Positions 1,310 through 15,715 of a DNA stretch of 64,000 nt are shown here, piece after piece. Both the position numbers and the translations under genes were made by a program. Location: IMG/VR virus record IMGVR_UViG_3300044646_001937, positions 124,001-188,000 of that record, one strand, 5' to 3'. Every line of letters starts with the position of its first letter. Positions within the stretch are counted from its first letter, which is position 1. The notes under the pieces are model-generated. The model was not told the DNA's origin. It was given only the letters and a program-made list of their open reading frames with translations, and ran no database searches.

Positions 1310-3520
1310 ATGCGCAAAACAACTCTTAAAAAACAGGCAGCAGACGACCAGATCGAGGGAGCCTTTTTCCAGCTTGCCTACCAAAGACTGCAAGATACTC
1401 TTAAAAATCTTATTCCTTATCTTGTAGGATTTGAAATTGTTAAGAAAAACCCAGAGAATACAAAAGCCCTGGGCGTCTTTGGGTTTAGGTCAAAAAATGG
1501 ACAGATTTTGTTTGTACCTGCCTTTTTCATTAATGGTAAAGTAAAGAACCTGGATTTGCTTTATAGTAAGAACAATGAACAGTTCTACCCCCTAAACGAA
1601 GATTTTGCAGAAATGTTCATTAAAGATGAACTTTTGGGGTTGGGTGAAAACTCTAACGAAAACAGGACTTCAGTCATGCGCGATGCCTCCCAGGGAGACT
1701 ATCGTCAGATGGCTATTCCTCCCAGAACAGGTAGATATGCTATCGCCTCTGTTTTGGATTATGTGGAAAACTCAGATAACAAGACCAAGAAAGCTTTCAC
1801 AGAGCTTATTGAAAAAGACGCTGAGTTCTGTGAGTCACTGCTGAGATTTTACCCTCTTGAGAAAGTAGCAAAAGCTATTGCCCTTGAAGATGGTAAAGAG
1901 TATCGCAAATCAGACCAGGCCGCAAAGAAGATCGAACTGGTTAAGATGAAGGATAAGGAAAAGGTTAAAAAGTTAAACGATTCTCAAAAGTCCACCCTCA
2001 TGACCCAGGGATATGTAATCGTTGACGATAGAGACGCTGGTGAAAAATCCAGCTTTGGCGCTGTAGACTACCTCAAGAAGTTCATCAACCCTGTAGACTC
2101 TGGGTTCTATTCTTACGTAACCAAGATTGGTGGAATTCGCTACGGACTAGTTCTTGTACGCCCTAAGCAGCTTCAACAGGATTTCGCCACAGACGACGTA
2201 TTGGTTATTGACCTTGATTCTAAGGACGGAACTACCTACATAAAAGATCACAAGCAGGTCTTCGTTAAAGATCAGATCAAGGTACAGGACTATTCTACTG
2301 TGCACAAGATGATGGTGGACACTTCTGAAGGAAAGCCAGGATATTCTAATGTCTACGTTTTAATTAATGAAAATCTAAAAGCTACACAGCCATTTAGAAT
2401 TAACGCAAATTTCAAAGACGCTTCAGGCATTCGCAGGATTGCAGTAGAGCCGCACAGCATATGGACAGATTCCTGCTGTGACGAAAAGGGAGGCAAAAAA
2501 GACAGACCTGGTAGCATTCATGATTTACCTAGAGGCAATTTCTATAATCACCCAAAGAAAGCCAGAGAAGTGCATCTCGTCATGACCAAGAGACAGGGTG
2601 ATCGCCTAGACTATCAGGACAACACGATCTATGTTCCTGCAGGATTTAAATTACTAAAGATCTCCCCAGCATGCTGCTTCCCTGGATGGAGGGAGACAGG
2701 TTTCTCTGGTAATGAAAATGACGGAGACGCCAAGGCACACGAACAGAAAATTAAAGGCGAACCAGGAACTCCAGGCAAACTTCACGCTATGCTGGAAGAT
2801 AAGAACATCTTCCCAATGAGTGTTCATACTAACGGTAGCGAATACTTCGTAGACATCAATGGGGCGAAGAAGAAGTATGATGACGCAATCTCTGCAAAGA
2901 TTGCTATGGTGATGGACATTGGTCTTGATGAAAAAGTAGCCGTTGAGTTGATTGATAGCCTTGTGGAAGGCTTCTCCAAGAAAGGGCATATCAAGATGGC
3001 GTTTACAGGGGACATGTATCCAGCACCATTTGAAGAGCAGCCATACACCAATGAGTTTGGACAGCCTACAAGCGTTGGTGTTGGACAGGAAAACACACTA
3101 GCAGGCATGGATAGCTATGTAGGCAACCCTACACAGCAGGATCTCGGAACAAAAGCAGAAGTACAGGGAATTGACCCAAGATTTGTCCAGAACGCTATTC
3201 AGCTCGCTCAGACAGGCCAAAAAGAAATTTTTGACACGCACATGATTGGAGCTCTTGCAAAGTATGTGAGCGTTACCGATAAGGTTTCTGAATATGTCCC
3301 CTCTATGGTTGAAGCCATGGATAGGCTGGGAAGAATTCTATTCCTACTTCATTGGGAGACTGACAAGTTTAAAGAAATGTATGGTCGAGGAGATCTGCCT
3401 GAGCTTGTTGAATTGGTTACGAGCGTGTTCAAGAACCTTGGTGAACTTACAGTTTTCTTGAAGCGTAAATCTCCAGAGTTATCAATCAACATGAGTAAAG
3501 CTGACGGCCTAGACTTATAA
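1310..3520 (+). CDS. Large hypothetical head-module protein (736 aa)
   Basis: Long ORF and first gene of the head cluster. N-terminal LKKQAADD carries the K-x-A motif. No family recognised. Confidence 0.6.
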   Translation: MRKTTLKKQAADDQIEGAFFQLAYQRLQDTLKNLIPYLVGFEIVKKNPENTKALGVFGFRSKNGQILFVPAFFINGKVKNLDLLYSKNNEQFYPLNEDFAEMFIKDELLGLGENSNENRTSVMRDASQGDYRQMAIPPRTGRYAIASVLDYVENSDNKTKKAFTELIEKDAEFCESLLRFYPLEKVAKAIALEDGKEYRKSDQAAKKIELVKMKDKEKVKKLNDSQKSTLMTQGYVIVDDRDAGEKSSFGAVDYLKKFINPVDSGFYSYVTKIGGIRYGLVLVRPKQLQQDFATDDVLVIDLDSKDGTTYIKDHKQVFVKDQIKVQDYSTVHKMMVDTSEGKPGYSNVYVLINENLKATQPFRINANFKDASGIRRIAVEPHSIWTDSCCDEKGGKKDRPGSIHDLPRGNFYNHPKKAREVHLVMTKRQGDRLDYQDNTIYVPAGFKLLKISPACCFPGWRETGFSGNENDGDAKAHEQKIKGEPGTPGKLHAMLEDKNIFPMSVHTNGSEYFVDINGAKKKYDDAISAKIAMVMDIGLDEKVAVELIDSLVEGFSKKGHIKMAFTGDMYPAPFEEQPYTNEFGQPTSVGVGQENTLAGMDSYVGNPTQQDLGTKAEVQGIDPRFVQNAIQLAQTGQKEIFDTHMIGALAKYVSVTDKVSEYVPSMVEAMDRLGRILFLLHWETDKFKEMYGRGDLPELVELVTSVFKNLGELTVFLKRKSPELSINMSKADGLDL

Positions 3521-3537
3521 TCATTGAAAAATGCTAT

Positions 3538-4584
3538 ATGTCATTAGAGCCTCAGCAGAATCCTCAGGTTGAGGATACATCTTTTAAAGACAGACTGCTA
3601 GCGATGAAAATGCTTCGCGAGAACATGTTTCTCGCAGAGCCTGAAAGGTATGGCATGGCTGATGTTGCCGAGGATTTGCCAGGCTCATTAAGACCATTAG
3701 GAGACATTGTAAAAAATGTTCTACCGTCCAGAATGATCATATCTGAGGATCCTGCTCAAAGGAAAAAACAGATAGATGCAGCAATTCAAAGAATAAAAGA
3801 AACAAGGCAAGGAGGCAAAGACCTTGGAAAGGAAATGCTGAGTAGTGCAGGCAGCATGGGGATGCATAGTATCCTTCCCAGTTTTGCGTTTGCAGCTATA
3901 GCCAGACTAATGGGTGGCGGAGGTGGGCTTTCCAGACTACACAGATTGAGAGCATCTGGAAGGAGAGCATTATCAGGCACAGCCGCACAAAGAGCAATGC
4001 ACGGCAAGTCCCAGTTACCCAGCCTAAGCCCAACACCAGACAACTATAATAATAGCCTTAAAAGATTTCTACCTTCTTTTACAGGATTAAAAAGATTAGG
4101 AACGCACTGGAAGCCTTCTTTAAAACATGTCGCAAACGATACATTAACAAATGCAGTCATGGCGGCAACTACAGGAGCGGCAGTACCGTTACTCAGTAGA
4201 TATTCAAATGTTTCTGACGCCGCCCTAGAGCAGGCTAGAAAGATAATGGAAGAGCAGCCTTATATTACAAGTCTACCTACAAATGAAATGCTCAGTGTCA
4301 TCAAAGGCGAGAAAGACAACAGAGGAGACAACAAGGCAAGAAACTTTTTACTAGGAGGTTTGGTTGGTGCTGGCTCTGGAGCTGTAGGAGGAGCTGTACC
4401 TAGTTTATTTAGCGGTGGTGGAGCAGTACTTAAAAGTCTCGTTAAAGGCAAACCCTTATTGTCAGGGATTGATCGAAGAATGACTAGCAAGATGCTTGGC
4501 AACGTCAGAAACTCCGCAATGTTTGGAGGAGCTATCGGGGCCCTCACAGGCCCAGAAGTAGCCATGATGGGTGAAAACGAATAA
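3538..4584 (+). CDS. Glycine-zipper hydrophobic protein, putative internal virion/ejection protein
   Basis: Gly/Ala-rich hydrophobic segments (FLLGGLVGAGSGAVGGAVP, AMFGGAIGALTG). Lies in the head module. Confidence 0.45.
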   Translation: MSLEPQQNPQVEDTSFKDRLLAMKMLRENMFLAEPERYGMADVAEDLPGSLRPLGDIVKNVLPSRMIISEDPAQRKKQIDAAIQRIKETRQGGKDLGKEMLSSAGSMGMHSILPSFAFAAIARLMGGGGGLSRLHRLRASGRRALSGTAAQRAMHGKSQLPSLSPTPDNYNNSLKRFLPSFTGLKRLGTHWKPSLKHVANDTLTNAVMAATTGAAVPLLSRYSNVSDAALEQARKIMEEQPYITSLPTNEMLSVIKGEKDNRGDNKARNFLLGGLVGAGSGAVGGAVPSLFSGGGAVLKSLVKGKPLLSGIDRRMTSKMLGNVRNSAMFGGAIGALTGPEVAMMGENE

Positions 4585-4585
4585 T

Positions 4586-5697: not shown

Positions 5698-5710
5698 TGT
5701 AAACAATCAT

Positions 5711-7222
5711 ATGGACGAGCCAAACATTCTCATTAAATCAGCATTATCCGAAGCAGTTCAAAAGATCAACGGAGGCATGTCCCCTACGGCAGCTCTCAAG
5801 AAAGTTGCGTCTGATTTTGATCTAAACCCCAATTACATTCAGAGAACAGGGGAAGCTTTAAATGTGGCGCTGCATTATAAGCATTTCAAGACAGCCTCCG
5901 ATAGATCTGACGAATTTGAAATTGCAGACATCCCCAAGGCTATTGAAGAAGTTTTTACAGTGAATGAGAAGACCGCTTCAGAATATATCACTGAAACTTT
6001 TGGAAACAATGACGCTAATGAGACGGTGTTTAACTATAACCGCGCACTGTCCAACCCAATCTATAAGCGAGCATTTCTTGAGGTGGTAGGAGCTACGGAA
6101 ACAAATGATTCTTACCCTACCACGTTTAAGACAGTGTATGAAAAGTCTGCAAATTATATCAGCAAACTTGAAAAGTCGGCAGAGGCAGCGGAAGTTGCTA
6201 AGGTTGCAGCAGAGATTGAGTTAAACGACACCTTTTCCACATTGTCAGATTCTTTCAGGAAAGATGCATCCTACAGATCTACGTTTGAAGAATTTGAGTC
6301 ACAAGTATTTGCTAAACACGGAGAAGCAGCTGTTCCCTATATTGATCTACTACATAAAACAGCTTGTCCTAATGATGAGCGTGGAGTGCATGATGATAAA
6401 TACATGATGTTTTCGCAGAGCAAAGAGGCTCAGTTATTTGACCGCCTAATGACCGCAGCCGCTACACTTGTAGAGGCAGAAAAAACAGCAGAAATTAATG
6501 CTGAAAATCTGGCTTACGAAAAAGCCTTTTTAAAAGAGTGTCACCAAATGCTAGGCAAGCAAGCAGAAGAGGAGAAAGAAGAAGCCTCTGAAAAAGATGA
6601 AGTTGAGGAAAAGGGCGAGACTGAAGAGAAAGGCGAAGCGGAAGAAAAAGAGGAAGAAGACCCGGTTTTAGAACAGATTAAAAAAAAAGTCTTAAATCCT
6701 GACGAGAAACAGGCAGCAGCTCTTTCAGAAGATCCTGTCCTTGAACAGGCTATGGAAAAAGACGCTTTTTTAGGTGGGGCTATAAGGGCAGGTGCAGGAT
6801 TGTTAAATACTAGAAGCTTTGGAAAAATGCTGGCCGGCCCGCTAGCGGAGCTTGTAGGAGATCCTGTGACCGAAGCGTTCCATCACAACTTTAAATCTCC
6901 AGCAAAGGCAGTTAAGCCTAACCTTACACTGGATAATATGGAGCGTAGACTTTTATTGCAGGAGCTGATGCTTACTGACCCTATCCTGTCCAAGGTCAAC
7001 CCAGCAAAAGTAGCCAGAGCCTTTGAACAGCTTTTAAGATTATCGCCAGAAATATCCAAACAGAAAGAGGTAGTCAGGGCAGAATTGCGAGCAATGGTTT
7101 CCAGTCAGGCGCTTAGCAAGTTTGATGCGGACTTGCTAGCCAAGACAGATTTGGGTATGCTTAAAAGAAGAGTTGCTACCCAGCAATATAATATGGGAAT
7201 GTCCGATAACTTTAGAATGTAA
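5711..7222 (+). CDS. Putative prohead core/internal protein, K-x-A rich, with acidic tract
   Basis: 16 K-x-A motifs, an EK-rich acidic tract, a duplicated EDPVLEQ, and a C-terminal domain starting FLGGAIRAGAGLL. Confidence 0.55.
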   Translation: MDEPNILIKSALSEAVQKINGGMSPTAALKKVASDFDLNPNYIQRTGEALNVALHYKHFKTASDRSDEFEIADIPKAIEEVFTVNEKTASEYITETFGNNDANETVFNYNRALSNPIYKRAFLEVVGATETNDSYPTTFKTVYEKSANYISKLEKSAEAAEVAKVAAEIELNDTFSTLSDSFRKDASYRSTFEEFESQVFAKHGEAAVPYIDLLHKTACPNDERGVHDDKYMMFSQSKEAQLFDRLMTAAATLVEAEKTAEINAENLAYEKAFLKECHQMLGKQAEEEKEEASEKDEVEEKGETEEKGEAEEKEEEDPVLEQIKKKVLNPDEKQAAALSEDPVLEQAMEKDAFLGGAIRAGAGLLNTRSFGKMLAGPLAELVGDPVTEAFHHNFKSPAKAVKPNLTLDNMERRLLLQELMLTDPILSKVNPAKVARAFEQLLRLSPEISKQKEVVRAELRAMVSSQALSKFDADLLAKTDLGMLKRRVATQQYNMGMSDNFRM

Positions 7223-7616: not shown

Positions 7617-9185
7617 ATGCCAGAGCATATCAAAAAAGGTAGTTTTGCTTTATTAAAACATCTACCGATGTTGGCGGGCAAAACCATGCCTGTGTTAGGC
7701 TCTGTACTTAGCGCAGGATCTGCGGTAAATAGGCTAGGCAGCGGAGATCTTTTAGGTGCAGGCCTGGATATAGGCTCAGCCATAACTTCTCCGTTTGCTC
7801 CAATGCTATCGTTACCTATTGATTTAATAAACACAGGTAGAGACATCATGAAAAGCAACGACAACACCAGCTCTACAGATGCTCTAAATGAAAAGCTTGA
7901 AAGAAAAAATTTTATGAAAAACGCTGCATCTCAATTTGCTCAAGATCTGGCTGACCCTCAAGCTGGATTAGATTCTGATTTATATCAGGCAATATCTCCC
8001 ATTATTTCCGCAGGCACGCAAGGACAGCAAAGTCCTGCGGAAGCAAAAAGATTAAGCGACCTACACAATCAGGTCAGGCAAGGGCTAGTAGGGCTGGAAT
8101 ACATGACAGGCTTGAAAAAGAATAAAGCCGAAACATTCTACGATGCACACCCTGTAGAAGCTACAGCAACTGACGCTTTATCTGGCTCTCTACCTGCCGC
8201 AGGAGTATTAGGACTTGCAGGTGTTGGTGAAAACTACAGACGTCAGTGGGCAAACATGAGGAAAACAGAGCCTGCGCAAATGGCTAGATCTGGTAATCCT
8301 GGGGTAGATGTGACTAATGCATCAGAGCTTCTAGAATCTGACAGACCAGACATTGCTAGGTTGTTTGGTACATTGAAAGATGATTCTGAGGGAATGCAGA
8401 AAAGATTGAAGCTGCTGGATAGACTGCAAAGACAACACGCCCCAGGCAGCCCTGAATCGTTTACAGGAAAATTGCAGGCTTATAATAAGGCTAAAGAAGA
8501 TGCAGTAGCAGCACACACAAGTAAGATAAACGAACTGCAAAGCAAACTGAACACAGGCGCTGTATCAGATAGAGGACAAGTTGAGAGCGTTAAAGCATTA
8601 ATGGCCTCACAGACAGCACAACACCAAAAAGAACTAGAAACACTCGAGGGAGTTAAAAAGAAATTGCTAGCCGAAGCAAGACAGAATCCATCTTCAGCAG
8701 CTTTGGAAAAATACGTAAACCTCCAAGAATCCTTAAGAAGAGGAAACATCAACGGAGGATTATCTTCAGCTATAGGCGAACAGGGTACACACATCCCAGG
8801 GCTTAAAGACCTAGCTCAAAAATATAATGTAACCGGAGCGCAGCAGCATTTTGATCCAGAGATACTGGCAGAGATAGCTAAAGAAAATTCTGGAGGTAAA
8901 TTCACAAGCGAACAGATTAAGAATATTGTTTCAGAGCTGGAAAATCCTGCAAATGCTACATCAGGCTTACGTAGATTTTGGTCTAAAGCAAAGATACCTA
9001 CAACCCGAGCAGCCATCGCTGGAGCTGGAGGGTTATCTCTGTATCATCTTCTTAAAATGATGCAGAATCAAAACTACTCAGGCAGCCAGATGAATGAGTG
9101 GAAGAAGAACTTGTTAAAATCCAGAGGAGATTTTGAAGCAGCTCAAGAATTAGAAAGCAGCCAACCTCAGCAACAACTAAGATAA
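7617..9185 (+). CDS. Putative internal virion/ejection protein with hydrophobic Gly-rich segments and a coiled coil
   Basis: Segments PVLGSVLSAGSAVNRLGSGDLLGAGLDIGSA, AAGVLGLAGVG and AAIAGAGGLSLYHLL. Central helical coiled coil. One KNA motif. Confidence 0.45.
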   Translation: MPEHIKKGSFALLKHLPMLAGKTMPVLGSVLSAGSAVNRLGSGDLLGAGLDIGSAITSPFAPMLSLPIDLINTGRDIMKSNDNTSSTDALNEKLERKNFMKNAASQFAQDLADPQAGLDSDLYQAISPIISAGTQGQQSPAEAKRLSDLHNQVRQGLVGLEYMTGLKKNKAETFYDAHPVEATATDALSGSLPAAGVLGLAGVGENYRRQWANMRKTEPAQMARSGNPGVDVTNASELLESDRPDIARLFGTLKDDSEGMQKRLKLLDRLQRQHAPGSPESFTGKLQAYNKAKEDAVAAHTSKINELQSKLNTGAVSDRGQVESVKALMASQTAQHQKELETLEGVKKKLLAEARQNPSSAALEKYVNLQESLRRGNINGGLSSAIGEQGTHIPGLKDLAQKYNVTGAQQHFDPEILAEIAKENSGGKFTSEQIKNIVSELENPANATSGLRRFWSKAKIPTTRAAIAGAGGLSLYHLLKMMQNQNYSGSQMNEWKKNLLKSRGDFEAAQELESSQPQQQLR

Positions 9186-9186: not shown

Positions 9187-10629
9187 ATGTACAAGGGTCT
9201 AATTAAATTCAGCTCTACAGACGATTGGAATTGGGATGTCGATCCTGTTCAATTAATTCATAATGTAAATACACTCACAAAAGCAGGAGCAGATAACTCT
9301 GAGCTTAAGACAGAAAAGACAGCTGGGCAGACGGATGCTCTGGTAATTGCCCTTGGAGCTTACGAGGGTACAGGCGCAAACAGAAATGGAGATATTTTTA
9401 AAGAAGCAGAATGTTTAAAACATTACAAAACATTCATTAAATCAGGCAGTCGCAAGTCTGATGGATCATATGATGGAAGAGCTTTAAACAGACATCATAA
9501 GAACAAACCAACAGATCCTAAATACGGCAACATCAAAGCTGCGACGTACAATAATAAGATGAAGCGTATTGAGTTGGTTATTGGACTAGACAACGACAAG
9601 TGCGCAGAAGAAATTCAAAAGCTAGCAGAAGGAAAGCAGATCAATGTGAGCATGGCTGCCAAGGTTGCATATGATAAGTGCACATGGTGTGGACATGACG
9701 CTAAAACAGACAGCGATAGATGTAAGCACATCCCTAAAGATCTTGGTGAGATTAATAAGCGCGGAGAGATGTGTAGCATGGATAATATAGATCCTAAATG
9801 GTTCGAACTTTCTATTGTAGGAAGACCTGCAGACCGTATAGGTATGTCGCTAAAACTTGCTTCAGATAATAACTATATCAAGACAGCAAATGATTATAGA
9901 GACCTGTATCCAGGGTTTACAATTCCTGAAGAAGATAACACATTTCTAAACATCTCAAAATACGCAGATGAAAAAAGAAGCCTTGTCAAGAAACTCGCTG
10001 CAATTGAAAAGCATATTGACGGTGTGATGAAGTCTACGCCAGCAAACTCGAAAGATAAATACCTTAAAGAGCAGCGCTCTAAACTAAGCGAAGCAGATGG
10101 CATATCTGATGACACTATTGAGGAGCTTAGAAAGTTCGAACCATCAAAACTTTTAAAAGCACTAGCAGATCATGGCATTGTCTTCTCTCCAGAAGATTTC
10201 GTTAAATACTTATTTGGAGCAAAAGCTCTAGGGGCTAAGTCAGAAGATATGTTTAGTAAAATCAAGAAGCGCCTACCTTCGATGTTTTCAGACATGGACG
10301 AGTCAGGTGATGATGAAATGAACGATGATAAGTACGAACCTTCTGTGTCTGATATTATGCCTAAAGGTTTACTGAATATGGTCAAAGGACTTTTCGATGA
10401 TCATTCGCTATTTGACAAACCTTCCCATAATCGAATTATGAGAATTACTATTGTAAAAAAATCTCCAAAAGCTAGACTAGCTTTGAAAGAAGAGAATACA
10501 AAAGAGGCTGCAGTAGATGAATTATCTAGGCAATACAGTATATATAAATTGGCTGCATTACGCTATATCAACAGTCAAAACAAGCTAGATGAAGACACAA
10601 TCTTTAATGCTTTGATGCAAAACAGATAA
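9187..10629 (+). CDS. Prohead (capsid maturation) serine protease, HK97/assemblin-type fold, with Zn-finger insertion and C-terminal extension
   Basis: Motifs NRNGDIF, RHHKN (candidate catalytic His), VSMA (candidate catalytic Ser), CTWCGH..CKH, and FELSIVGRPAD (cf. L.EVS.V..PA of HK97-type proteases). Lies upstream of the scaffold and capsid genes. Confidence 0.8.
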   Translation: MYKGLIKFSSTDDWNWDVDPVQLIHNVNTLTKAGADNSELKTEKTAGQTDALVIALGAYEGTGANRNGDIFKEAECLKHYKTFIKSGSRKSDGSYDGRALNRHHKNKPTDPKYGNIKAATYNNKMKRIELVIGLDNDKCAEEIQKLAEGKQINVSMAAKVAYDKCTWCGHDAKTDSDRCKHIPKDLGEINKRGEMCSMDNIDPKWFELSIVGRPADRIGMSLKLASDNNYIKTANDYRDLYPGFTIPEEDNTFLNISKYADEKRSLVKKLAAIEKHIDGVMKSTPANSKDKYLKEQRSKLSEADGISDDTIEELRKFEPSKLLKALADHGIVFSPEDFVKYLFGAKALGAKSEDMFSKIKKRLPSMFSDMDESGDDEMNDDKYEPSVSDIMPKGLLNMVKGLFDDHSLFDKPSHNRIMRITIVKKSPKARLALKEENTKEAAVDELSRQYSIYKLAALRYINSQNKLDEDTIFNALMQNR

Positions 10630-10686: not shown

Positions 10687-11817
10687 ATGTTAAACAAAAT
10701 ACTATCAAAACTCGCTGCTGAACAACCAATTGATCCTGCGGCTGCACCACAAACCGAAGAGATGCATGAAGCTGCAGAAACCCCACAGATGGAAGCAGCT
10801 GAGCACGCTCCAGGCGGATATGAAGAAGCTGGAGAAGGCGGCGGAGATGAGCTTGCACAGATCGAGCAATTGATTTCACAACTTTCCCCAGAAGAAGTTC
10901 AACAGCTGATTCAAGAACTTGAGGGAGGAGGAGCTGGCGCAGGAGGCGACGATACAGCCAACCTCTCGCAAGCAATTGAAGGACATCTCGCAGAAACGCC
11001 TGAAGCCTCAGTCCCTGAAGCTCCAGAAGAAAAGCAGGCAGCTCTTTCTTTTGTTAAGTCTGCGTCATACATTCATGGGTTTTTAAAGTACGCAACCGAT
11101 CAGGGTGTCGATATTCATCAGGCAGTTGACCTGTATGACAGTGCACTATCTCAAGCCATTCACGATCTCAAAGTAGCCTCTTTGAAAGGTAATCAGACAA
11201 AGCTGGATGTTGATAAAGACGGCAAAATCGAAGCATCTGATTTGGCAAAATTGAGAGCAGGCAAAGGCAAGACCGTAAAAAAGGCAAACGTCGGCGACGC
11301 CTTCACCGCAGCAGGAAGAGCTCTTCGAGGAGGTCTTCCTGACAACGTGACAGAAACATTACAGGGGTTACCTCAGCAGGGCGCAGAAGCATTGCGTGGC
11401 GTTGCCGATAAATTAGACCCAGGATTTTTAGAGCAATTAAAAGCGCAAGCCGGCAATGCCGTTAGTGGTGCGGGTAACTTTATGCGAGAGCATGGCATTG
11501 ATCCAACAATCGCAGCAGCGCTTGGCGGAGGTGCTGCTTTAGGCGCTGGAGGCATGGGGCTATACAAACATCTTACTCGTCCAAAGCAAGAGGAAGAAAT
11601 GAAGATGGCTTCTTACTACGATGGATTATTTGAAAGAGCTTCGGAATATGGTCTCTCCCCAGATGAAACGATTAAGCTTGCTGGCTGGTGGGACACTATT
11701 AAAGAAAAAATGCCCCAAAGAGCAGGAATTCCTGGAGCTGTAGGAGGACCCGCACCAATTCCAGGAAGAATGCCTGAAGGCAAGCCTGTTACAGGCGGCA
11801 CAGCTAAAGCTAAATAA
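10687..11817 (+). CDS. Modular internal head protein (acidic region, EF-hand-like loop, glycine zipper)
   Basis: 8 K-x-A motifs, a DVDKDGKIEASD loop, AALGGGAALGAGGMGLY, and two copies of the Y..G...A...G module. Confidence 0.55.
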   Translation: MLNKILSKLAAEQPIDPAAAPQTEEMHEAAETPQMEAAEHAPGGYEEAGEGGGDELAQIEQLISQLSPEEVQQLIQELEGGGAGAGGDDTANLSQAIEGHLAETPEASVPEAPEEKQAALSFVKSASYIHGFLKYATDQGVDIHQAVDLYDSALSQAIHDLKVASLKGNQTKLDVDKDGKIEASDLAKLRAGKGKTVKKANVGDAFTAAGRALRGGLPDNVTETLQGLPQQGAEALRGVADKLDPGFLEQLKAQAGNAVSGAGNFMREHGIDPTIAAALGGGAALGAGGMGLYKHLTRPKQEEEMKMASYYDGLFERASEYGLSPDETIKLAGWWDTIKEKMPQRAGIPGAVGGPAPIPGRMPEGKPVTGGTAKAK

Positions 11818-11830
11818 CAAAAACAAACTA

Positions 11831-11859: not shown

Positions 11860-11881
11860 CAAACAATCAACAACCAAATAT

Positions 11882-12781
11882 ATGGCAAAACTAACAAAAC
11901 ACGCAGAAGTATTAAGTCAGCTCCACTCGATGGTTAAAAAGCAGGCAGAAGAAGCTCAGAAGAATATCTCCGGAGTTCCCGGTGGTGATGTTAAATCTGT
12001 AAGCGTTAGCGATCAGCATGAGTCGACTAACAAGAATTCTGTAGGTCCTGAAAATGTGGCGCAGGGTTATCACCAAAAGCCTTCCGAAGATTCCGCAGAG
12101 CCTCTCTCAGGGTCTAAGAGCGCTAGCGATCTTGGTGCAGAAATTCTGGACATCATCCGCAAGCAGGCAGATGCACAGGATTCCGTGACAGGTAAACCAG
12201 GTGACGTTAAGTCTGAAAGCGTTGGAGACGATCAGGAGAATGTTGATAAGAACAGCGTGAAACCCGAGAACAATAAGCAGGACTACAGCCAGAAAGGTTC
12301 AACTGACGACTCCAAGCCACTAGCCGGCGCCAAGAAGGCTGAAGTTGAAGAATTGGCCGCTAAGGTTGCCAGCTATGAATTAGGTCGTCAGTTTTGTGCA
12401 GCCCTTTTAAAGTCTGCATCTGACAGATTTGAACCTAACCAGGAAGAGCTTATGAAGGAAGCAGGTCGCCGTGATTTCGATCAGTTGATCGCGCAGGCTG
12501 CGTCTGAACTTGAAAGCACAGAAGAAGCCGAAAAGCAGGGAGCCGCACATTTTGATGAAATTACAAAGCAGGCCGCACTTAACAAGGCATTAGAAGAAAA
12601 TGCTCTGTTGACTCAGAAAATTGCTGAGTATGAAAACTATATCAAGACCGCCCAGGAGCAGTATCAAGCAGAAACAGCTGCAGCTGCAGCTCAAGAGCAG
12701 CAAGTCAAATTGGCTGAAGCTGTCGCCGATATTGTTTTGAGTAAGTTAAAGTCTGAAGTTGTCCCTGCTGCAGGAGAATAA
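11882..12781 (+). CDS. Putative capsid scaffolding/prohead core protein
   Basis: Acidic and helical with a C-terminal coiled coil. Has 12 K-x-A motifs and two ~60-aa internal repeats. Lies between the protease and capsid genes. Confidence 0.6.
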   Translation: MAKLTKHAEVLSQLHSMVKKQAEEAQKNISGVPGGDVKSVSVSDQHESTNKNSVGPENVAQGYHQKPSEDSAEPLSGSKSASDLGAEILDIIRKQADAQDSVTGKPGDVKSESVGDDQENVDKNSVKPENNKQDYSQKGSTDDSKPLAGAKKAEVEELAAKVASYELGRQFCAALLKSASDRFEPNQEELMKEAGRRDFDQLIAQAASELESTEEAEKQGAAHFDEITKQAALNKALEENALLTQKIAEYENYIKTAQEQYQAETAAAAAQEQQVKLAEAVADIVLSKLKSEVVPAAGE

Positions 12782-12796
12782 CTTTAGTTAGCGTTT

Positions 12797-12958
12797 ATGC
12801 CTGCTGACTCACAAACTAGTGATAGTATTGAGCAGCAGGCATTGAATGCTATAGCTCATTTACCTCCAGAGGATAAAAAGAAGATCCTCGAATATATCCA
12901 CAGCATCATTAATCTAGAAAAAGTTAAAAATGACCAAGGAAGCTCTACACAAGATTGA
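12797..12958 (+). CDS. Small unannotated protein (53 aa, MPADSQTSDSIEQQALNAIAHLPPEDKKKILEYIHS...)
   Basis: Not in the ORF track. Fills the gap, has a TTTATG start, and its helical LPPEDKKKILEYI resembles LSPEEVQQLIQEL in ORF 10687. Confidence 0.55.
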   Translation: MPADSQTSDSIEQQALNAIAHLPPEDKKKILEYIHSIINLEKVKNDQGSSTQD

Positions 12959-13322
12959 AGAATTTGTCAAAATAGCTCTACATGAGATTAATGACCTTAG
13001 GCAGCAGCTAGCTGCCCAAACTACAAAGATTGCATCAGAAGAGCTGCAGAAGGACAAAGAATTGGAAAGCGCTTTAAAGAAAGCTGCTGAAGCTATGTAC
13101 AACTCAGACTTTATTAACGACGAAGAGGAAAAATTCACGTTTGTTAAAAAGGCTAAAGAAGATTCTAAGTACCTAGCAAGAGTTGTTGAGCGTGTGTGTA
13201 ATGCAGCTGATGTAGCTTACATGGGCAAAACAGCCAAAGTAAAATCCTCCAATCACTCTGATGACCCTGTGGTAAGGAGAGCCTTTGGTTACGATAATAA
13301 CTACAGCCTTTTAGACGAATAA
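12930..13322 (+). CDS. Small coiled-coil head/scaffold-associated protein
   Basis: At least 6 K-x-A motifs in 130 aa, and a DDPVV motif like the EDPVL of ORF 5711. Confidence 0.55.
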   Translation: MTKEALHKIEEFVKIALHEINDLRQQLAAQTTKIASEELQKDKELESALKKAAEAMYNSDFINDEEEKFTFVKKAKEDSKYLARVVERVCNAADVAYMGKTAKVKSSNHSDDPVVRRAFGYDNNYSLLDE

Positions 13323-13326
13323 TATT

Positions 13327-13746
13327 ATGAACAACACTCAGCAAGCATATGTTAACGGATTTATTAAAAGGGCAGCTGAAAACGGTTATTCTGAAGACGA
13401 AGCACTTAATCTGCTTAAGCAAGCAGCCGATCCAGCTAATGATGTGCAACCTGGCACAGCTTCTTTAATCTCTCCTGTAGCAGGAGGTTTATTGGCAGCT
13501 CAAGGGTTAGGCGCAATGGTCGGGCATAATTATGCACCTATTAGCGACAAAGAATTACGTGAAGAAATGGCCTACTCTGAAGATCCATCAATCAGCAAAG
13601 CTCTTAAGTATCTTTTAGTTCCTGGCTATTTCGGCTATCGCCAAGCTAAGAACCAAAGACTTGAGTCTGCTTACGATAAATACAGAGATGCGCAGCGTCA
13701 GCAAAACCCGATGATGGGACAGCAATCACAAATACAGCAATATTAA
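13327..13746 (+). CDS. Putative internal head cargo protein with N-terminal leader module
   Basis: N-terminal AYVNGFIKRAAENGYS..LLKQA, followed by hydrophobic PVAGGLLAAQGLGAMVG. Confidence 0.5.
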   Translation: MNNTQQAYVNGFIKRAAENGYSEDEALNLLKQAADPANDVQPGTASLISPVAGGLLAAQGLGAMVGHNYAPISDKELREEMAYSEDPSISKALKYLLVPGYFGYRQAKNQRLESAYDKYRDAQRQQNPMMGQQSQIQQY

Positions 13747-13753
13747 AATATTG

Positions 13754-13782
13754 TTGACTATAGTAATTTTTTTTAACATAAT
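13754..13782 (+). promoter_or_regulatory. sigma70-type promoter TTGACT-N17-CATAAT for the decoration/capsid transcript
   Basis: Near-consensus hexamers with a 17-nt spacer, upstream of a ~110-nt leader. Confidence 0.65.
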
Positions 13783-13899
13783 ATTTGTATAACTTTGCAT
13801 TAGAACATTTCTAGAAAACCTTGATCGGTAGCTGGGGTGGGAAGGCGAAGCGACAAAAACAACAACAAACAACAAAAACAAAATAGGAGATAGATAAAT

Positions 13900-14397
13900 A
13901 TGATTAACTTCAAAAAAGGACCCGCTCTTAGCTTGCACCAAGTAAATTTCATTGGTAAAGCTGTGGACGGCGAAGACATTGAAGCAGGCCATGTGGTTCG
14001 TCTAAATGATAACGATGGAGTTGTTGAAGTTCTCAAGGGCGCTTCCAGTTCCAGTGTTTCCAAAGACGCAGTCTACGGGTTTGCTATTAACAACCAAGAC
14101 GCAGGAGACGTTATCGAATCAGGTGTTATCGGTGTGTATGCACTTGATGGCGCTTCGGTGATCGAAACAGATAAGTTGCCAGAAGGTACAGTACCTAGCG
14201 ATTACGCTCTTGGCGCACAGGTAACCACAAATACCGCAGGTGAAATTATCACACTGCCTGGTGGGTTTACCGGTAAGGTGCTTGGTCAGGTTGAAGGTTA
14301 TCGCGACCTTCCAAAAACCAAGGAAATTATCGTTGACGGCAAAAAGGTCAAAGTTCAGGGACTTGTTTCCTTCTTGGGCATCAAACTCGCTAGCTAA
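13900..14397 (+). CDS. Putative capsid decoration/cement protein
   Basis: 165 aa and beta-rich (IEAGHVV..VYGFA..G..V..G.V pattern). Immediately upstream of the MCP. Confidence 0.6.
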   Translation: MINFKKGPALSLHQVNFIGKAVDGEDIEAGHVVRLNDNDGVVEVLKGASSSSVSKDAVYGFAINNQDAGDVIESGVIGVYALDGASVIETDKLPEGTVPSDYALGAQVTTNTAGEIITLPGGFTGKVLGQVEGYRDLPKTKEIIVDGKKVKVQGLVSFLGIKLAS

Positions 14398-14425
14398 CCT
14401 TAACCAATAGATTAAAATAAAATAT

Positions 14426-15385
14426 ATGGAAAAAATCGCAAATCAAAGAGTGTTCAACGATACGTTCGTTGAAATGGTTAAAGCTGGCGAAGAAAAGAAG
14501 GCAGCAGTGTCTGCACAGTCTTTCACTCGCAACAAGCTTCGTGAAGAAAGCTTCACGGAAAAGATCATCACCCCTATCGACATCAGCAATGATGACCTCG
14601 ACAAGGCTGAGAATCCTGAGCTTCTTGTTAAGTGGAATGATCGTGAGCCTGATACTGCGCCTGCAGTGACAATCCCATTGGGTGTTGTTCCTGACATGTT
14701 CCAGTTCTCTGGTACTCGTTATCCTTCCTACTTCACTCGTATTACGAGTCCGAAGTTCAACAAGGACATCGACCAGCTCCGTAGCTATGATTACGACATC
14801 CGCGCAATCATGCTTGAGTTGAGCACCAAGGACATTGCAACCGAAATCGACACACGCTTTATGCAGCGCGTGGACAGCATCATCGGTCCAGTCAACGCAG
14901 CCAACACTCTCAACGGCATTGGGCTTCCACAGAATGTCACCATCAGCGGTGGTATTACTCGTGAAAACGTCGCAGAAGCATTCAAGGTCATTCAGCGCCT
15001 GAAGGTTCCATTTGGTCCCTCCCAGCCTGATGGCGGCGAAAGCAAGGGCGTTATGCTCATGAACAACGTCACTGCACAGGACTTCGTTAAGATGAGCCGC
15101 AGTGAAGTTGGTGGTGATCTTGCACAGGAAATGTGGGTGAATGGTCTCCCATCCAAGACTCTCTTGGGTGTTAAGCCGATCTACACAATCAAGCGTGACC
15201 TCGTCAAGGATGGCGAAATCTACTTGTTCTCTTCCGAAGAATTCTTCGGTAAGTACTACAGATTGCAGCCATTGACTGTGTTCATGAAGAACGAAGCATA
15301 CTTCTTGGAGTACTTCCAGTACATGAACCTCTCACTCGCAATCGGTAACGTGAAGGGTGTTGTGAAGGTCAGCTTCAACGCTTAA
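14426..15385 (+). CDS. Major capsid protein (HK97 fold)
   Basis: 319 aa. Strong C-ending codon bias (TTC, AAC, ATC, GAC) typical of a highly expressed gene. Spine-helix-like LSTKDIATEIDTRFM and C-terminal LAIGNVKGVVKV. Follows the protease and scaffold genes and is followed by a strong terminator. Confidence 0.85.
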   Translation: MEKIANQRVFNDTFVEMVKAGEEKKAAVSAQSFTRNKLREESFTEKIITPIDISNDDLDKAENPELLVKWNDREPDTAPAVTIPLGVVPDMFQFSGTRYPSYFTRITSPKFNKDIDQLRSYDYDIRAIMLELSTKDIATEIDTRFMQRVDSIIGPVNAANTLNGIGLPQNVTISGGITRENVAEAFKVIQRLKVPFGPSQPDGGESKGVMLMNNVTAQDFVKMSRSEVGGDLAQEMWVNGLPSKTLLGVKPIYTIKRDLVKDGEIYLFSSEEFFGKYYRLQPLTVFMKNEAYFLEYFQYMNLSLAIGNVKGVVKVSFNA

Positions 15386-15411
15386 GCGATACTAGAGTTA
15401 GTGATTTAATG

Positions 15412-15441
15412 AGGGGACCCTTTAACCAGGGTCCCCTTTTT
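15412..15441 (+). terminator. Intrinsic terminator after the MCP
   Basis: Stem-loop AGGGGACCCT-ttaacc-AGGGTCCCCT followed by a T run. Confidence 0.85.
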
Positions 15442-15447
15442 AATGCC

Positions 15448-15475
15448 TTGATATGATGTTTAAATGCATTATAAT
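15448..15475 (+). promoter_or_regulatory. sigma70-type promoter TTGATA-N16-TATAAT, probably giving a leaderless transcript
   Basis: The -10 box ends 6 nt before the ATG at 15482. Confidence 0.55.
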
Positions 15476-15481
15476 AATCTT

Positions 15482-15715
15482 ATGAATAACGAAAACATTC
15501 TAGCAGAGTTCGAAAGTTTCATTGAGAAATCAGCAATGGTGGCTCCTCAGCAATCTACAGGAACTAATATGCAGATGGAAGGATCTGAAGGCATTGCAAG
15601 CACACCAGCCATGGGTGCTCCACAACCAAGGATAATGCCTACAGGTAACTTCAATACAGGAGCGGGCGCACCTCCTCCACAAAAGGCTAAGGCATTAACC
15701 AACAAGCCTCAGTAA
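15482..15715 (+). CDS. Small low-complexity protein with a K-x-A-terminated N-terminal helix
   Basis: MNNENILAEFESFIEKSA followed by a Pro/Gly/Gln-rich tail. Start 15482 preferred because 15464 lies inside the predicted promoter. Confidence 0.55.
   Translation: MNNENILAEFESFIEKSAMVAPQQSTGTNMQMEGSEGIASTPAMGAPQPRIMPTGNFNTGAGAPPPQKAKALTNKPQ

What the first reader, a model, noticed from the sequence alone, without database searches (positions are those of the whole stretch)
1310..15715. K-x-A processing code across the head module: predicted substrate signature of the phage protease
Seen (counted by eye): 16 K-x-A motifs in ORF 5711, 11 in the protease, 8 in 10687, 12 in 11882, at least 6 in 12930 and 2 in 13327, plus N-terminal single sites in 1310 (KKQAA) and 15482 (EKSA). 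In the major capsid protein they occur only in the first ~27 residues (MEKIAN, EEKKAA). The 941-aa sheath has only about three. They are often preceded by a hydrophobic or acidic residue and followed by S, A or E. Known: T4 gp21 and phiKZ gp175 cut many head proteins after Glu motifs, and herpesvirus assemblins, which share the fold, cut after Ala (x-x-A/S). Inference: this phage uses an Ala-specific K-x-A|(S/A/E) protease that shreds scaffolds, trims the capsid N-terminus and releases cargo domains from polyprotein-like precursors. Caveat: K and A are abundant here and the tape measure also has several such motifs, so enrichment needs a formal test.
Basis: partly seen in the sequence, partly recalled or inferred. 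Interest (0 to 1): 0.85.

Follow-up and report, generated by a model that had tools for sequence, protein, structure and literature searches.

The report
Lys-x-Ala head-protein processing code
The head proteins of this large uncultured phage, and of its distant cultured relatives, carry a strongly over-represented and conserved Lys-x-Ala motif that is most likely the cutting signal of the phage's own capsid-maturation protease, a specificity not described before for phage head proteases.

Summary
In the head module (1310-15715) K-x-A occurs 77 times against 37.6 expected. It is the top outlier of 1,565 gapped residue pairs (z 6.4-7.4, also after local shuffling). The 25 non-head genes of the window are neutral (68 vs 67.6).

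All the excess lies in an extended motif: hydrophobic P5, Lys P3, free P2, Ala P1, small or Glu P1'. [LIVMF]-x-K-x-A-[SAGE] occurs 23 times against 3.0.

Motif Lys and Ala are conserved in orthologues (0.88 and 0.85, against 0.67 and 0.62 for other Lys and Ala). The middle residue drifts freely.

The motif defined on the window replicates in two ~27%-identical cultured phages. In Salmonella phage Arash it occurs 24 times against 1.6, and genome-wide it is confined to the head module. In Vibrio phage D69 it occurs 23 times against 1.6.

129 of 136 diverse capsid-protein representatives keep one K-x-A just before the HK97-fold body. The protease keeps sites in its disordered linker, even in Bacillus phage G.

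The same scan on T4 recovers its known I/L-x-E code.

Cleavage itself is inferred, not shown. I rate it a new specificity variant of a known mechanism.

The parts
9187..10629 (+). Capsid-maturation (prohead) serine protease, 480 aa. It has an N-terminal beta-rich protease domain (about residues 48-211), a disordered linker (216-252) and a helical scaffold-like C-terminal domain (260-480). It carries 12 K-x-A against 4.5 expected.
   Evidence: phrog_18299 'head maturation protease', E 2.4e-9. AF2 model with pLDDT 69. Foldseek against BFVD gives 37 hits at E<1e-3, many of them named prohead protease. K-x-A counts.
9496..9498 (+). His104 codon, candidate catalytic His.
   Evidence: Invariant in 26 clade members and in Arash gp222, D69 and phage G gp19. 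Coordinates checked.
9649..9651 (+). Ser155 codon (the VSMA motif), candidate catalytic Ser.
   Evidence: Invariant. Coordinates checked.
9853..9966 (+). Three K-x-A sites just after the protease domain, predicted self-release sites: K223-L-A|S, K232-T-A|N and K258-Y-A|D.
   Evidence: They lie in or at the edge of the pLDDT<50 linker. L222-x-K-x-A-(S/N) and K258-x-A260 are conserved across the window phage, L011, Arash, D69 and Bacillus phage G. They are conserved in 6-8 of 8 orthologues.
10501..10554 (+). [quoted passage not shown] They lie 39 and 24 residues from the end, in an 'M-site-like' position.
   Evidence: Conserved 7/8 and 8/8. Y453, K454, A456 and A457 are invariant in 26 sequences.
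14426..15385 (+). Major capsid protein, HK97 fold, 319 aa. K-x-A occurs only in residues 3-27.
   Evidence: AF2 model with pLDDT 87 and pTM 0.81, with residues 1-30 at low confidence. Foldseek against PDB gives 366 hits at E<1e-3, including HK97, T5 and D3 capsids. A sequence profile hits phage G gp27, PDB 6WKK, at E 1.7e-14.
14495..14503 (+). K24-K-A26 of the capsid protein. This is the predicted maturation site; the mature N-terminus is predicted at Ala27.
   Evidence: 129 of 136 representatives at 27-61% identity have K-x-A in this aligned segment. The K24 and A26 columns are 82-83% conserved and among the roughly 22 best of 319 columns, whereas P2 is 24%. Arash has GLVKEA|G and D69 has GLTKEA|G at residue 27.
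5711..7222 (+). Internal head protein of 503 aa with the densest motif load: 16 K-x-A against 5.4 expected. Fifteen of them fall in the first 352 residues, at spacings of 9-50 residues.
   Evidence: Orthologues at 35-67% identity keep 13-21 sites. Most positions are conserved in 5-8 of 8 orthologues.
11882..12781 (+). Scaffold-like protein of 299 aa, rich in Ala, Glu and Lys, lying between the protease and the capsid gene. It has 12 K-x-A against 4.3 expected. The scaffold role is inferred from position and composition.
   Evidence: Eleven of the 12 sites are conserved in 7-8 of 8 orthologues. Predicted fragments are 8-59 residues long.
12930..13322 (+). Small head protein of 130 aa with 7 K-x-A against 1.9 expected.
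10687..11817 (+). Fast-evolving head protein of 376 aa with 8 K-x-A against 3.9 expected, including an N-terminal leader ending K8-L-A10|A.
1310..3520 (+). Head protein of 736 aa, homologue of the Arash virion protein gp218. It has a conserved N-terminal leader ending K8-Q-A10|A (nt 1331-1339), plus 8 further K-x-A that mostly lack the flanking features.
   Evidence: the site at residue 8 is conserved 8/8 with P2 = I/A/Y/Q/K/S. Site classes.
13327..13746 (+). Protein of 139 aa. Its N-terminus is a module of about 30 residues bounded by two K-x-A: GFIKRA|A ... LLKQA|A.
15464..15715 (+). Protein of 83 aa with a single site, I-E-K22-S-A24|M.
20776..21015 (+). Protein of 79 aa outside the reported range, lying among the tail genes. 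It carries the same two-site N-terminal module: GFIKYA|E ... ILKRA|A.
   Evidence: (2 sites against 0.4 expected).
7617..9185 (+). Head-module protein of 522 aa just upstream of the protease. It is depleted in K-x-A (1 against 4.2 expected), as if avoiding the motif.
   Evidence: Orthologues give 0 vs 3.1, 0 vs 2.5 and 1 vs 3.3. The grouping was made post hoc.

Best explanation
K-x-A is the core of the recognition site of the phage's own prohead serine protease (ORF 9187, His104/Ser155). More fully the site is hydrophobic(P5)-x-Lys(P3)-x(P2)-Ala(P1), followed by Ser, Ala, Gly or Glu (P1').

Proposed course of events (all inferred):
1. The protease enters the procapsid through its helical C-terminal domain.
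2. Once concentrated there it cuts after Ala.
3. It frees itself at the linker sites (residues 223-260) and near its C-terminus (439/454).
4. It removes a 26-residue propeptide from the capsid protein, cutting K24-K-A26|A27.
5. It clips leaders of 8-11 residues from ORFs 1310, 5711, 10687 and 11882.
6. It cuts the scaffold-like protein 11882 and the internal proteins 5711 and 12930 into peptides of about 10-60 residues that can leave the shell.

Shown here:
- the motif, its head-specific enrichment and its conservation;
- its replication in distant phages;
- its placement at domain boundaries;
- the protease assignment.

Inferred: that the sites are cut, and that the scissile bond follows Ala. 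The register rests on two points. The constrained positions alternate (P5, P3, P1), as expected for a substrate strand docked on the enzyme. And the same P3-x-P1 register, with a small P1', is seen in T4 (I/L-x-E), in SPN3US (A-x-E followed by Ser, PMC10052503) and in herpesvirus assemblin (x-A followed by Ser, from my own knowledge).
For: 1. Enrichment. 77 against 37.6, top of 1,565 pairs. z is 7 after local shuffles. The excess lies only in flanked sites: K.A[SAGE] 45 vs 12.2, [LIVMF].K.A[SAGE] 23 vs 3.0, and unflanked sites 17 vs 18.8.
2. Head specificity. Non-head window genes give 68 vs 67.6. The Lys/Ala/Glu-rich helical tape measure gives 15 vs 16.1. In the whole Arash genome the strict motif is 29 vs 2.0 in the head module and 25 vs 19.1 elsewhere. 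The one strong outlier elsewhere is gp242, which the Arash authors' mass spectrometry lists as a structural protein (PMC10585845).
3. Conservation. Motif Lys 0.88 against 0.67 for other Lys; motif Ala 0.85 against 0.62. The site-level Mann-Whitney p values are 5e-7 and 3e-6. P2 is unconstrained.
4. Independent replication of the window-derived motif: Arash z 18.5, D69 z 17, with their non-head controls neutral. K-x-A is also top or second in relatives L010, L011 and L012.
5. Capsid-protein N-terminal site kept in 129 of 136 representatives at 27-61% identity. It lies at the border between the low-confidence N-terminus and the HK97 body.
6. Protease linker sites conserved as far as phage G, in a disordered segment.
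7. Positive control: the same scan on T4 gp67/68/21/22/23/24 ranks I-x-E first and L-x-E eighth.
8. It is not a DNA-level signal, because codon usage at motif residues equals that elsewhere. It is not due to internal repeats, because flanks of the sites are no more alike than random positions.
9. K-x-A falls within the first 12 residues in 6 of 14 head proteins against 1 of 25 others, Fisher p 0.005.
Against: - There is no biochemical or mass-spectrometric evidence of cleavage for any member of this clade. The Arash virion proteomics paper reports no peptide-level or N-terminal data. It also lists 100% coverage for the motif-rich gp223, although 116 proteins were detected, so the preparation was probably not pure.
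- Some conserved K-x-A lie inside beta strands of the protease domain (residues 117 and 159) and are probably structural.
- Part of the signal in Arash and D69 comes from repeated helix-turn modules bounded by K-x-A. These could be binding modules.
- The protease has no detectable sequence link to a biochemically characterised protease: no Pfam family, and hhalign against T4 gp21 gives probability 0.05. The solved-structure search found nothing.
- The extended motif was defined on the same window data. This is offset by the replication in Arash and D69.
Confidence: 0.72

Rival explanations
1. K-x-A is a short binding motif, not a cleavage site. Under this reading it serves capsid targeting, scaffold-shell attachment or protease docking. 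Multiple copies in internal proteins would mediate multivalent contacts inside the procapsid. The Lys and Ala would be contact or packing residues of small helix-turn modules.
For: - A recurrent module of about 30 residues, GF[ILM]KxA..G..[LV][LV]KxA, sits at the N-terminus of several unrelated small proteins in the window (13327, 20776) and in relatives.
- The scaffold-like proteins of Arash and D69 contain repeated units bounded by K-x-A.
- Enrichment and conservation alone cannot tell binding from cutting.
Against: - In the window the flanks of the sites are not similar to one another, so most sites are not in modules.
- The motif also marks the capsid-protein N-terminus and the disordered protease linker, which are classic cleavage positions.
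- The constraint pattern (P5/P3/P1 plus a small P1', with P2 free) and the T4 control match a protease code.
- Binding and cleavage are not exclusive: capsid-targeting leaders in T4 end in a cleavage site (my own knowledge).
Confidence: 0.13
2. The protease does use the motif but cuts at another bond. One possibility is after Lys (Lys = P1, Ala = P2'), as HK97 gp4 cuts after Lys103 (my own knowledge).
For: Sequence statistics do not locate the scissile bond. Lys is as conserved as Ala.
Against: - With Lys as P1, the constrained positions would be P3, P1, P2' and P3'. That pattern is less usual than P5/P3/P1/P1'.
- Arg does not replace Lys in the window (R-x-A ratio 0.86), which is unusual for a basic S1 pocket.
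- Relatives with known codes share the P3-x-P1 register with a small P1' (PMC10052503).
Confidence: 0.1
3. The enrichment is a by-product of composition, helical periodicity, internal duplication or a DNA-level signal, with no specific function.
For: The enriched proteins are rich in Lys, Ala and Glu and probably helical.
Against: - Local block shuffles keep z at 7.
- Other spacings and the reversed order are not enriched.
- The compositionally similar tape measure is neutral.
- Flanks are not repeated.
- Codon usage is unchanged.
- Motif residues are conserved above the same residue types elsewhere, while P2 drifts.
- The signal replicates in genomes of different G+C content: Arash is 53% (PMC10585845), and the window is about 38-45%.
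Confidence: 0.03

Closest known systems
T4 gp21 prohead protease and its I/L-x-E processing code
   Same: - One protease encoded in the head module.
- A P3-x-P1 motif with a free P2.
- Many sites in the scaffold and internal proteins, and one N-terminal site in the capsid protein.
- Self-processing of the protease.
- Short N-terminal leaders ending in the motif (from my own knowledge of T4 internal proteins).
- The same statistical footprint in the same scan: I-x-E ranks first.
   Different: - P1 is Ala and P3 is Lys instead of Glu and Ile/Leu. [LI]-x-E is not enriched here (z 1.7).
- There is no detectable sequence similarity to gp21.
- The capsid propeptide is 26 residues. In T4 it is about 65 (my own knowledge).
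phiKZ gp175 / SPN3US gp245 proteases with the S/A/G-x-E code
   Same: - A large myovirus with virion-type multisubunit RNA polymerase genes next to the head genes (PMC10585845).
- Extensive processing of many head proteins.
- A preference for Ser at P1' (PMC10052503).
   Different: - [SAG]-x-E is not enriched here (z 0.3).
- The P1 residue differs: Ala here, Glu there.
- The capsid protein and protease belong to a different sequence lineage. The nearest solved relative of the capsid protein is phage G gp27, PDB 6WKK.
Herpesvirus assemblin (protease-scaffold precursor with R and M sites; cuts after Ala, before Ser)
   Same: - Predicted P1 Ala with a small P1' (Ser or Ala).
- The same precursor layout: protease domain, linker, then a helical scaffold-like C-terminal part.
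- Conserved sites right after the protease domain (R-like) and about 24-39 residues from the C-terminus (M-like). The R/M architecture is described in PMC4498786 and PMC8537868.
   Different: - P3 is Lys here. A hydrophobic P3, [VLI]-x-A, is not enriched (z -1.8).
- Dozens of sites are spread over many proteins rather than a handful.
- There is no detectable sequence or solved-structure match.
- The herpes consensus itself is taken from my own knowledge and was not checked here.
Salmonella phage Arash gp222, Vibrio phage D69 VPHD69_0270 and Bacillus phage G gp19 (uncharacterised homologues)
   Same: - Homologous protease domain with the same invariant His, Ser and Cys/His cluster, and the same post-domain L-x-K-x-A-S site.
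- Arash and D69 show the same head-specific motif enrichment.
   Different: - Only about 27-32% identity.
- In phage G the enrichment is weak (25 vs 14.7, z 2.7), and its capsid protein has no K-x-A.
- None of these proteins has been studied for processing.

Membership tests
Assemblin-fold prohead serine proteases (herpes S21, T4 gp21, HK97 gp4, phiKZ gp175 lineages) | Fold similarity to known prohead proteases | tested here: inconclusive
   Foldseek of the AF2 model (pLDDT 69) against BFVD gives 37 hits at E<1e-3. Many are named prohead, head-maturation or capsid-maturation protease. Against solved structures in the PDB there is no hit at E<1e-3. The TM-scores are low because the model has several domains.
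Assemblin-fold prohead serine proteases (herpes S21, T4 gp21, HK97 gp4, phiKZ gp175 lineages) | Conserved catalytic Ser and His | tested here: met
   His104 and Ser155 are invariant in 26 clade members and in Arash, D69 and phage G homologues at 26-30% identity. A catalytic role is inferred from this conservation only.
Assemblin-fold prohead serine proteases (herpes S21, T4 gp21, HK97 gp4, phiKZ gp175 lineages) | Sequence membership in a curated protease family | tested here: not met
   No Pfam family for the window protein or for four homologues. hhalign against T4 gp21 gives probability 0.05. A PDB sequence profile search finds nothing. The only match is PHROG 18299, 'head maturation protease', at E 2.4e-9.
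Assemblin-fold prohead serine proteases (herpes S21, T4 gp21, HK97 gp4, phiKZ gp175 lineages) | Gene sits in the head module, upstream of scaffold-like and major capsid genes | tested here: met
   The gene order is 9187 (protease), 10687, 11882 (scaffold-like) ... 14426 (HK97-fold capsid protein). The same order is found in Arash and D69.
Assemblin-fold prohead serine proteases (herpes S21, T4 gp21, HK97 gp4, phiKZ gp175 lineages) | Demonstrated cleavage of head proteins | not testable with these tools
   This needs virion N-terminomics or co-expression assays. The Arash proteomics paper has no peptide-level data.
Glu-specific phage head processing codes (T4 I/L-x-E; phiKZ/SPN3US S/A/G-x-E) | P1 Glu motif over-represented in head proteins | tested here: not met
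   [LI].E gives 58 vs 47.9 (z 1.7) and [SAG].E gives 87 vs 84.3 (z 0.3) in the window head module. Neither is enriched in Arash or D69. The T4 control does show I-x-E at rank 1.
Glu-specific phage head processing codes (T4 I/L-x-E; phiKZ/SPN3US S/A/G-x-E) | P3-x-P1 register with an unconstrained P2, and many sites in scaffold and internal proteins | tested here: met
   P2 conservation is 0.62 against 0.68 background, not significant. There are 12-16 sites in ORFs 11882 and 5711. The constraints fall at P5, P3, P1 and P1'.
Herpesvirus assemblin specificity and precursor layout | P1 Ala with P1' Ser | tested here: inconclusive
   Ala is fixed by the definition of the motif. P1' is Ser, Ala or Gly in 42-61% of sites against a 24-26% background. 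That Ala is P1 is inferred, not shown.
Herpesvirus assemblin specificity and precursor layout | Hydrophobic P3 (Val/Leu/Ile) | tested here: not met
   [VLI].A gives 70 vs 83.7 (z -1.8). The position is Lys here.
Herpesvirus assemblin specificity and precursor layout | Protease fused to a scaffold-like C-terminal part, with a release site after the protease domain and a site near the C-terminus | tested here: met
   The AF2 domain layout is beta domain 48-211, disordered 216-252, helical 260-480. Conserved K-x-A sites lie at 223, 232 and 258 and at 439 and 454. This concerns sequence placement only; no cleavage was tested.
HK97-fold major capsid proteins | HK97 fold | tested here: met
   AF2 model with pLDDT 87 and pTM 0.81. 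There are 366 PDB matches at E<1e-3, including HK97, T5, D3 and phage capsids generally. A profile hits phage G gp27, PDB 6WKK, at E 1.7e-14.

The most novel reading that the evidence does not exclude
Lys-x-Ala followed by a small residue is a third specificity class of phage prohead proteases, alongside the Glu-specific T4 and phiKZ codes.
- It would be used by a very large, mostly uncultured clade of ~180-215 kb myoviruses that encode their own multisubunit RNA polymerase. The clade spans 674 capsid-protein clusters at 50% identity and has Arash and the Vibrio D69 group as its cultured members.
- It would share P1 Ala and a small P1' with herpesvirus assemblin.
- Motif density could then be used genome-wide to list the internal or ejected head proteins of any member. 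Short N-terminal leaders and the GFxKxA...LLKxA module would be the clade's cleavable capsid-targeting signals.
Probability: 0.6. Interest if true: 0.7.

Novelty: new variant of a known kind. Interest (0 to 1): 0.62.

Why it matters
Proteolytic maturation codes are known experimentally for only a few phage lineages: T4, the phiKZ/SPN3US group and HK97. This finding gives a specific, testable code for a large and almost unstudied clade that has two cultured representatives.

If it holds:
- It predicts mature N-termini. For example, the Arash capsid protein would start at Gly30 and the window capsid protein at Ala27.
- It identifies which head proteins are shredded, which are trimmed and which are protected.
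- It offers a sequence-only way to find internal or ejected proteins encoded outside the head module, such as Arash gp242.
- It shows that the P1 pocket of this protease fold has switched between Glu and Ala within tailed phages. This bears on the evolutionary link to herpesvirus assemblin.

Tried and rejected
- Pfam on 18 head-module proteins gave nothing above threshold. PHROGs matched only the protease and the RNA polymerase fragment.
- Foldseek of the protease model against the PDB gave no significant hit. A PDB sequence profile search for the protease gave none. hhalign against T4 gp21 found no similarity.
- The Arash supplements hold gene and protein sequences but no peptide lists. The published mass spectrometry therefore cannot confirm or refute cleavage.
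- Literature searches for a K-x-A or Lys-x-Ala prohead protease motif found nothing. One paper look-up failed because the paper is not held, and one search was malformed.
- Explanations rejected:
  - Local composition.
  - Internal repeats in the window proteins.
  - A DNA-level motif.
  - A general property of helical Lys/Ala-rich proteins, since the tape measure is neutral.
- I considered extending the code to phage G and to actinophages with homologous proteases. The signals there are weak: phage G K-x-A z 2.7, and Rhodococcus phage Finch R-x-A z 3.2 with K-x-A 31 vs 19.3. I left these as leads.
- The 'avoidance' of K-x-A by ORFs 3538, 7228, 7617 and the capsid body (1 vs 8.2) was grouped after seeing the data and is only suggestive.

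Full report
**Setting**

The window is one strand-uniform stretch of a large myovirus genome. It is 100% identical over the protease to a 204-kb IMG/VR contig. The genes run in this order:
- 36-1232: a fragment related to the RNA polymerase largest subunit.
- 1310-15715: the head module.
- Further downstream: tail genes and three giant ORFs.

Only two proteins in the head region matched PHROGs:
- ORF 36-1232 (RNA polymerase).
- ORF 9187-10629 ('head maturation protease', E 2.4e-9).

Pfam recognises none of the head proteins.

The nearest cultured relatives are Salmonella phage Arash and the Vibrio phages D69, D181 and D148, at about 27-32% protein identity for the protease and capsid protein. 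Metagenomes hold hundreds of closer relatives on contigs of 180-215 kb.

Yes.

Per-ORF composition shuffles give:

| ORF | Observed | Expected |
|---|---|---|
| 5711 | 16 | 5.4 |
| 9187 | 12 | 4.5 |
| 11882 | 12 | 4.3 |
| 12930 | 7 | 1.9 |
| 10687 | 8 | 3.9 |
| 1310 | 9 | 4.6 |

No tail or other gene is enriched. The sheath gives 3 vs 3.6 and the tape measure 15 vs 16.1.

I then removed the choice of motif from the test. I scanned all residue pairs a-x(0-4)-b with enough expected counts.
- In the head module K-x-A is the single top outlier of 1,565 pairs: 77 vs 37.5, z 6.4, p 1e-8.
- In the other 25 genes it is unremarkable, at 68 vs 67.6.
- Shuffling only within 10, 20 or 40-residue blocks leaves z at 7.0-7.4, so local composition is not the cause.
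- The signal is specific for order, spacing and residue. Observed/expected ratios are A-x-K 0.64, KA 0.98, K-xx-A 1.22, K-xxx-A 0.90, R-x-A 0.86, K-x-S 0.67 and K-x-G 0.75.

**The motif is longer than K-x-A**

Around the head-module sites:
- The residue two before Lys is hydrophobic in 49% of sites (background 26%).
- The residue before Lys is often acidic.
- The residue after Ala is Ser, Ala or Gly in 42% of sites (background 24%), and Glu is also frequent.
- The middle residue is unbiased.

All of the excess sits in flanked sites:

| Pattern | Observed | Expected | z |
|---|---|---|---|
| K.A[SAGE] | 45 | 12.2 | 9.8 |
| [LIVMF].K.A | 38 | 9.2 | 9.4 |
| [LIVMF].K.A[SAGE] | 23 | 3.0 | 11.4 |
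| K.A[^SAGE] | 32 | 25.1 | 1.5 |
| Sites with neither flank | 17 | 18.8 | -0.4 |

Roughly 35-40 of the 77 sites therefore carry the signal, and the rest are chance occurrences.

**Conservation**

I aligned each head protein with its orthologues from eight related contigs at 48-86% identity.
- Lys in the motif is conserved at 0.88, against 0.67 for other Lys of the same proteins.
- Ala in the motif is conserved at 0.85, against 0.62 for other Ala. The site-level Mann-Whitney p values are 5e-7 and 3e-6.
- The middle residue (0.62) is no more conserved than average (0.68). The N-terminal site of ORF 1310, for example, reads KQA, KIA, KAA, KYA, KKA and KSA in different relatives.
- The fast-evolving 5711 family keeps 13-21 sites at 35-67% identity.

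**Independent replication**

In Arash, K-x-A is again the top pair in the head module (46 vs 21.1), with L-x-K second. In D69 it is also the top pair (51 vs 22.4), while nine tail genes have 4 vs 10.0.

The motif [LIVMF].K.A[SAE], defined on the window alone, scores 24 vs 1.6 (z 18.5) in Arash head proteins and 23 vs 1.6 (z 17) in D69. Their non-head controls are neutral.

Across all 246 ORFs of the Arash genome:
- K-x-A is 46 vs 21.5 in the head module and 210 vs 244.6 elsewhere.
- The strict motif is 29 vs 2.0 in the head module and 25 vs 19.1 elsewhere.
- There is one clear outlier outside the module, gp242 (6 vs 0.34). The Arash authors' virion mass spectrometry lists it as a structural protein (PMC10585845).

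**Placement of the sites**

*Capsid protein.* ORF 14426 folds as an HK97-type capsid protein. The model has pLDDT 87, and 366 PDB matches include HK97, T5 and D3. A sequence profile links it to phage G gp27, PDB 6WKK.
- Its only K-x-A sites are in residues 3-27. This is the low-confidence N-terminal segment that precedes the confidently folded body.
- A full search of 1.84 billion cluster representatives found 674 related clusters.
- Of 136 full-length representatives at 27-61% identity, 129 have K-x-A in the aligned segment.
- The K24 and A26 columns are 82-83% conserved, among the best ~22 of 319 columns. Position 25 is 24% conserved and the neighbouring positions about 20%.
- The site in the window protein is therefore K24-K-A26, with Ala27 following it. 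Arash and D69 have GL(V/T)KEA followed by G at residue 27.

*Protease.* The protease model has three parts:
- a beta-rich domain (48-211);
- a disordered linker (216-252);
- a helical C-terminal domain.

Sites K223-L-A, K232-T-A and K258-Y-A lie in or at the edge of the linker. L222-x-K-x-A-(S/N) and K258-x-A260 are conserved in the window phage, L011, Arash, D69 and even Bacillus phage G gp19. Two more invariant sites lie 39 and 24 residues from the C-terminus.

*N-terminal leaders.* Six of 14 head proteins, against 1 of 25 others, have K-x-A within the first 12 residues (p 0.005). This gives predicted leaders of 8-11 residues on ORFs 1310, 5711, 10687 and 11882.

**Is ORF 9187 a protease?**

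- The model matches 37 predicted viral structures at E<1e-3, many annotated as prohead or capsid-maturation proteases.
- It has no Pfam family, no PDB match and no detectable similarity to T4 gp21.

It is therefore best described as an uncurated lineage of prohead serine protease, not a member of a named family.

**Controls for the inference**

- *Positive control.* The same unbiased scan on T4 gp67, gp68, gp21, gp22, gp23 and gp24 ranks I-x-E first (23 vs 10.4), L-x-E eighth and K-x-A 81st. The method therefore recovers a code that is known experimentally. The signal in this window is stronger than T4's.
- *Other codes.* The T4-type, phiKZ-type and herpes-type motifs are not enriched here (z 1.7, 0.3 and -1.8).
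- *Protein level.* Codon usage at motif Lys and Ala equals that elsewhere, so the constraint acts on the protein.
- *Repeats.* Flanks of sites within a protein are no more alike than random positions, so internal repeats do not explain the window's counts.

**Mechanism**

The best-supported reading is that the protease recognises hydrophobic-x-Lys-x-Ala and cuts after Ala, before a small residue or Glu. This would:
- release the protease from its own C-terminal domain;
- trim 26 residues from the capsid protein;
- clip short leaders;
- reduce the scaffold-like protein 11882 and the internal proteins 5711 and 12930 to short peptides.

The register (Ala as P1) is inferred from two points:
- The constrained positions alternate.
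- The P3-x-P1 register with a small P1' is shared with T4, SPN3US (A-x-E with Ser at P1'; PMC10052503) and, from my own knowledge, herpesvirus assemblin. The R-site/M-site precursor layout of assemblin (PMC4498786, PMC8537868) resembles that of ORF 9187.

No cleavage has been observed for any member of the clade. The Arash paper gives only coverage values, from a preparation in which 116 proteins were detected.

**Rivals**

- *Binding motif.* This is the main rival. A module of about 30 residues bounded by two K-x-A recurs at the N-terminus of several small proteins (window 13327 and 20776; relatives). Arash and D69 scaffold-like proteins contain repeated units with the motif. This does not account for the capsid and linker sites, and it is compatible with cleavable targeting signals.
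- *Cleavage at another bond of the same motif.* This cannot be excluded from sequence.
- *Compositional artefact.* This is effectively excluded.

**Novelty**

Full-text searches found no report of a Lys-x-Ala prohead protease code. The Arash paper does not discuss processing.

The mechanism is the known one: a prohead protease with a short P3-x-P1 code. The specificity and the lineage are new. The clade is large, at 674 capsid clusters at 50% identity.

Weak (K/R)-x-Ala signals in phage G and Rhodococcus phage Finch, which have homologous proteases, hint that the code may reach further. I do not claim this.

Noticed in passing
window 9679-9729 (protease residues 165-181): The protease domain contains a cluster C165-x2-C168 ... 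C179-x-H181. It is invariant in 26 clade members and in Arash gp222, D69 and Bacillus phage G gp19. It looks like a metal (zinc) site inserted in a prohead protease.
   Followed up: partly
window 13327-13746 and 20776-21015; L010:8240, L011:6137/13024/13884/17318/18052, L012:8105: A module of about 30 residues, GF[ILM]KxA..G..(8-16)..[LV][LV]KxA, recurs mostly at the N-terminus of otherwise unrelated proteins. One of them is encoded among the tail genes (20776). It has no Pfam family. It may be a cleavable capsid-targeting module.
   Followed up: partly
window 36-1232: This ORF resembles part of the largest subunit of a multisubunit RNA polymerase (PHROG RNA polymerase beta families; PF04998 in the orthologues). 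It lies directly upstream of the head module. The arrangement is the same in Arash, where RNA polymerase subunits were the most abundant proteins in virion preparations. K-x-A is not enriched in it (2 vs 2.0).
   Followed up: partly
window 7617-9185 and 3538-4584: Two head-module proteins have almost no K-x-A (1 vs 4.2 and 0 vs 2.1). The 7617 family is also depleted in relatives (0 vs 3.1, 0 vs 2.5, 1 vs 3.3). This could be motif avoidance by proteins that must survive the protease. The grouping was made post hoc.
   Followed up: partly
L018:34466-35335 (Arash gp242, record 174466-175335): This is the only ORF outside the Arash head module with a strong load of the strict motif (6 vs 0.34). 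It is listed as a structural protein by the authors' mass spectrometry. It is a candidate internal head protein encoded far from the head genes.
   Followed up: no
L011 (whole locus, 21 kb around the protease): In this 51%-identity relative the head region has extra genes. GxxxG is the top residue pair (94 vs 44.7). The precomputed Pfam hits include a faint glycine-zipper family and faint-to-weak CXXCH cytochrome-type families. These proteins may be membrane-active or haem-binding cargo.
   Followed up: no
window 40264-63242: Three consecutive giant ORFs of 2,237, 1,773 and 3,616 aa lie at the end of the tail region. Their K-x-A counts are at expectation. Their functions were not examined.
   Followed up: no
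L013 (Bacillus phage G gp14-gp28) and L014 (Rhodococcus phage Finch gp13-gp19): Both phages have homologous proteases and show weak signals of the same kind. Phage G has K-x-A 25 vs 14.7, concentrated in gp19 and gp21. Finch has R-x-A 35 vs 20.4 and K-x-A 31 vs 19.3. This suggests a wider basic-x-Ala code, with Arg replacing Lys in high-G+C hosts.
   Followed up: partly
window 9280-9290 (protease residues 30-35): Relatives have L-T-K-x-A-S/A at protease residues 30-35 (the clade consensus, Arash, D69 and phage G). The window phage reads LTKAGA, so it has lost the K-x-A register at this otherwise conserved N-terminal site. The next site, K44-T-A|G, is retained.
   Followed up: no
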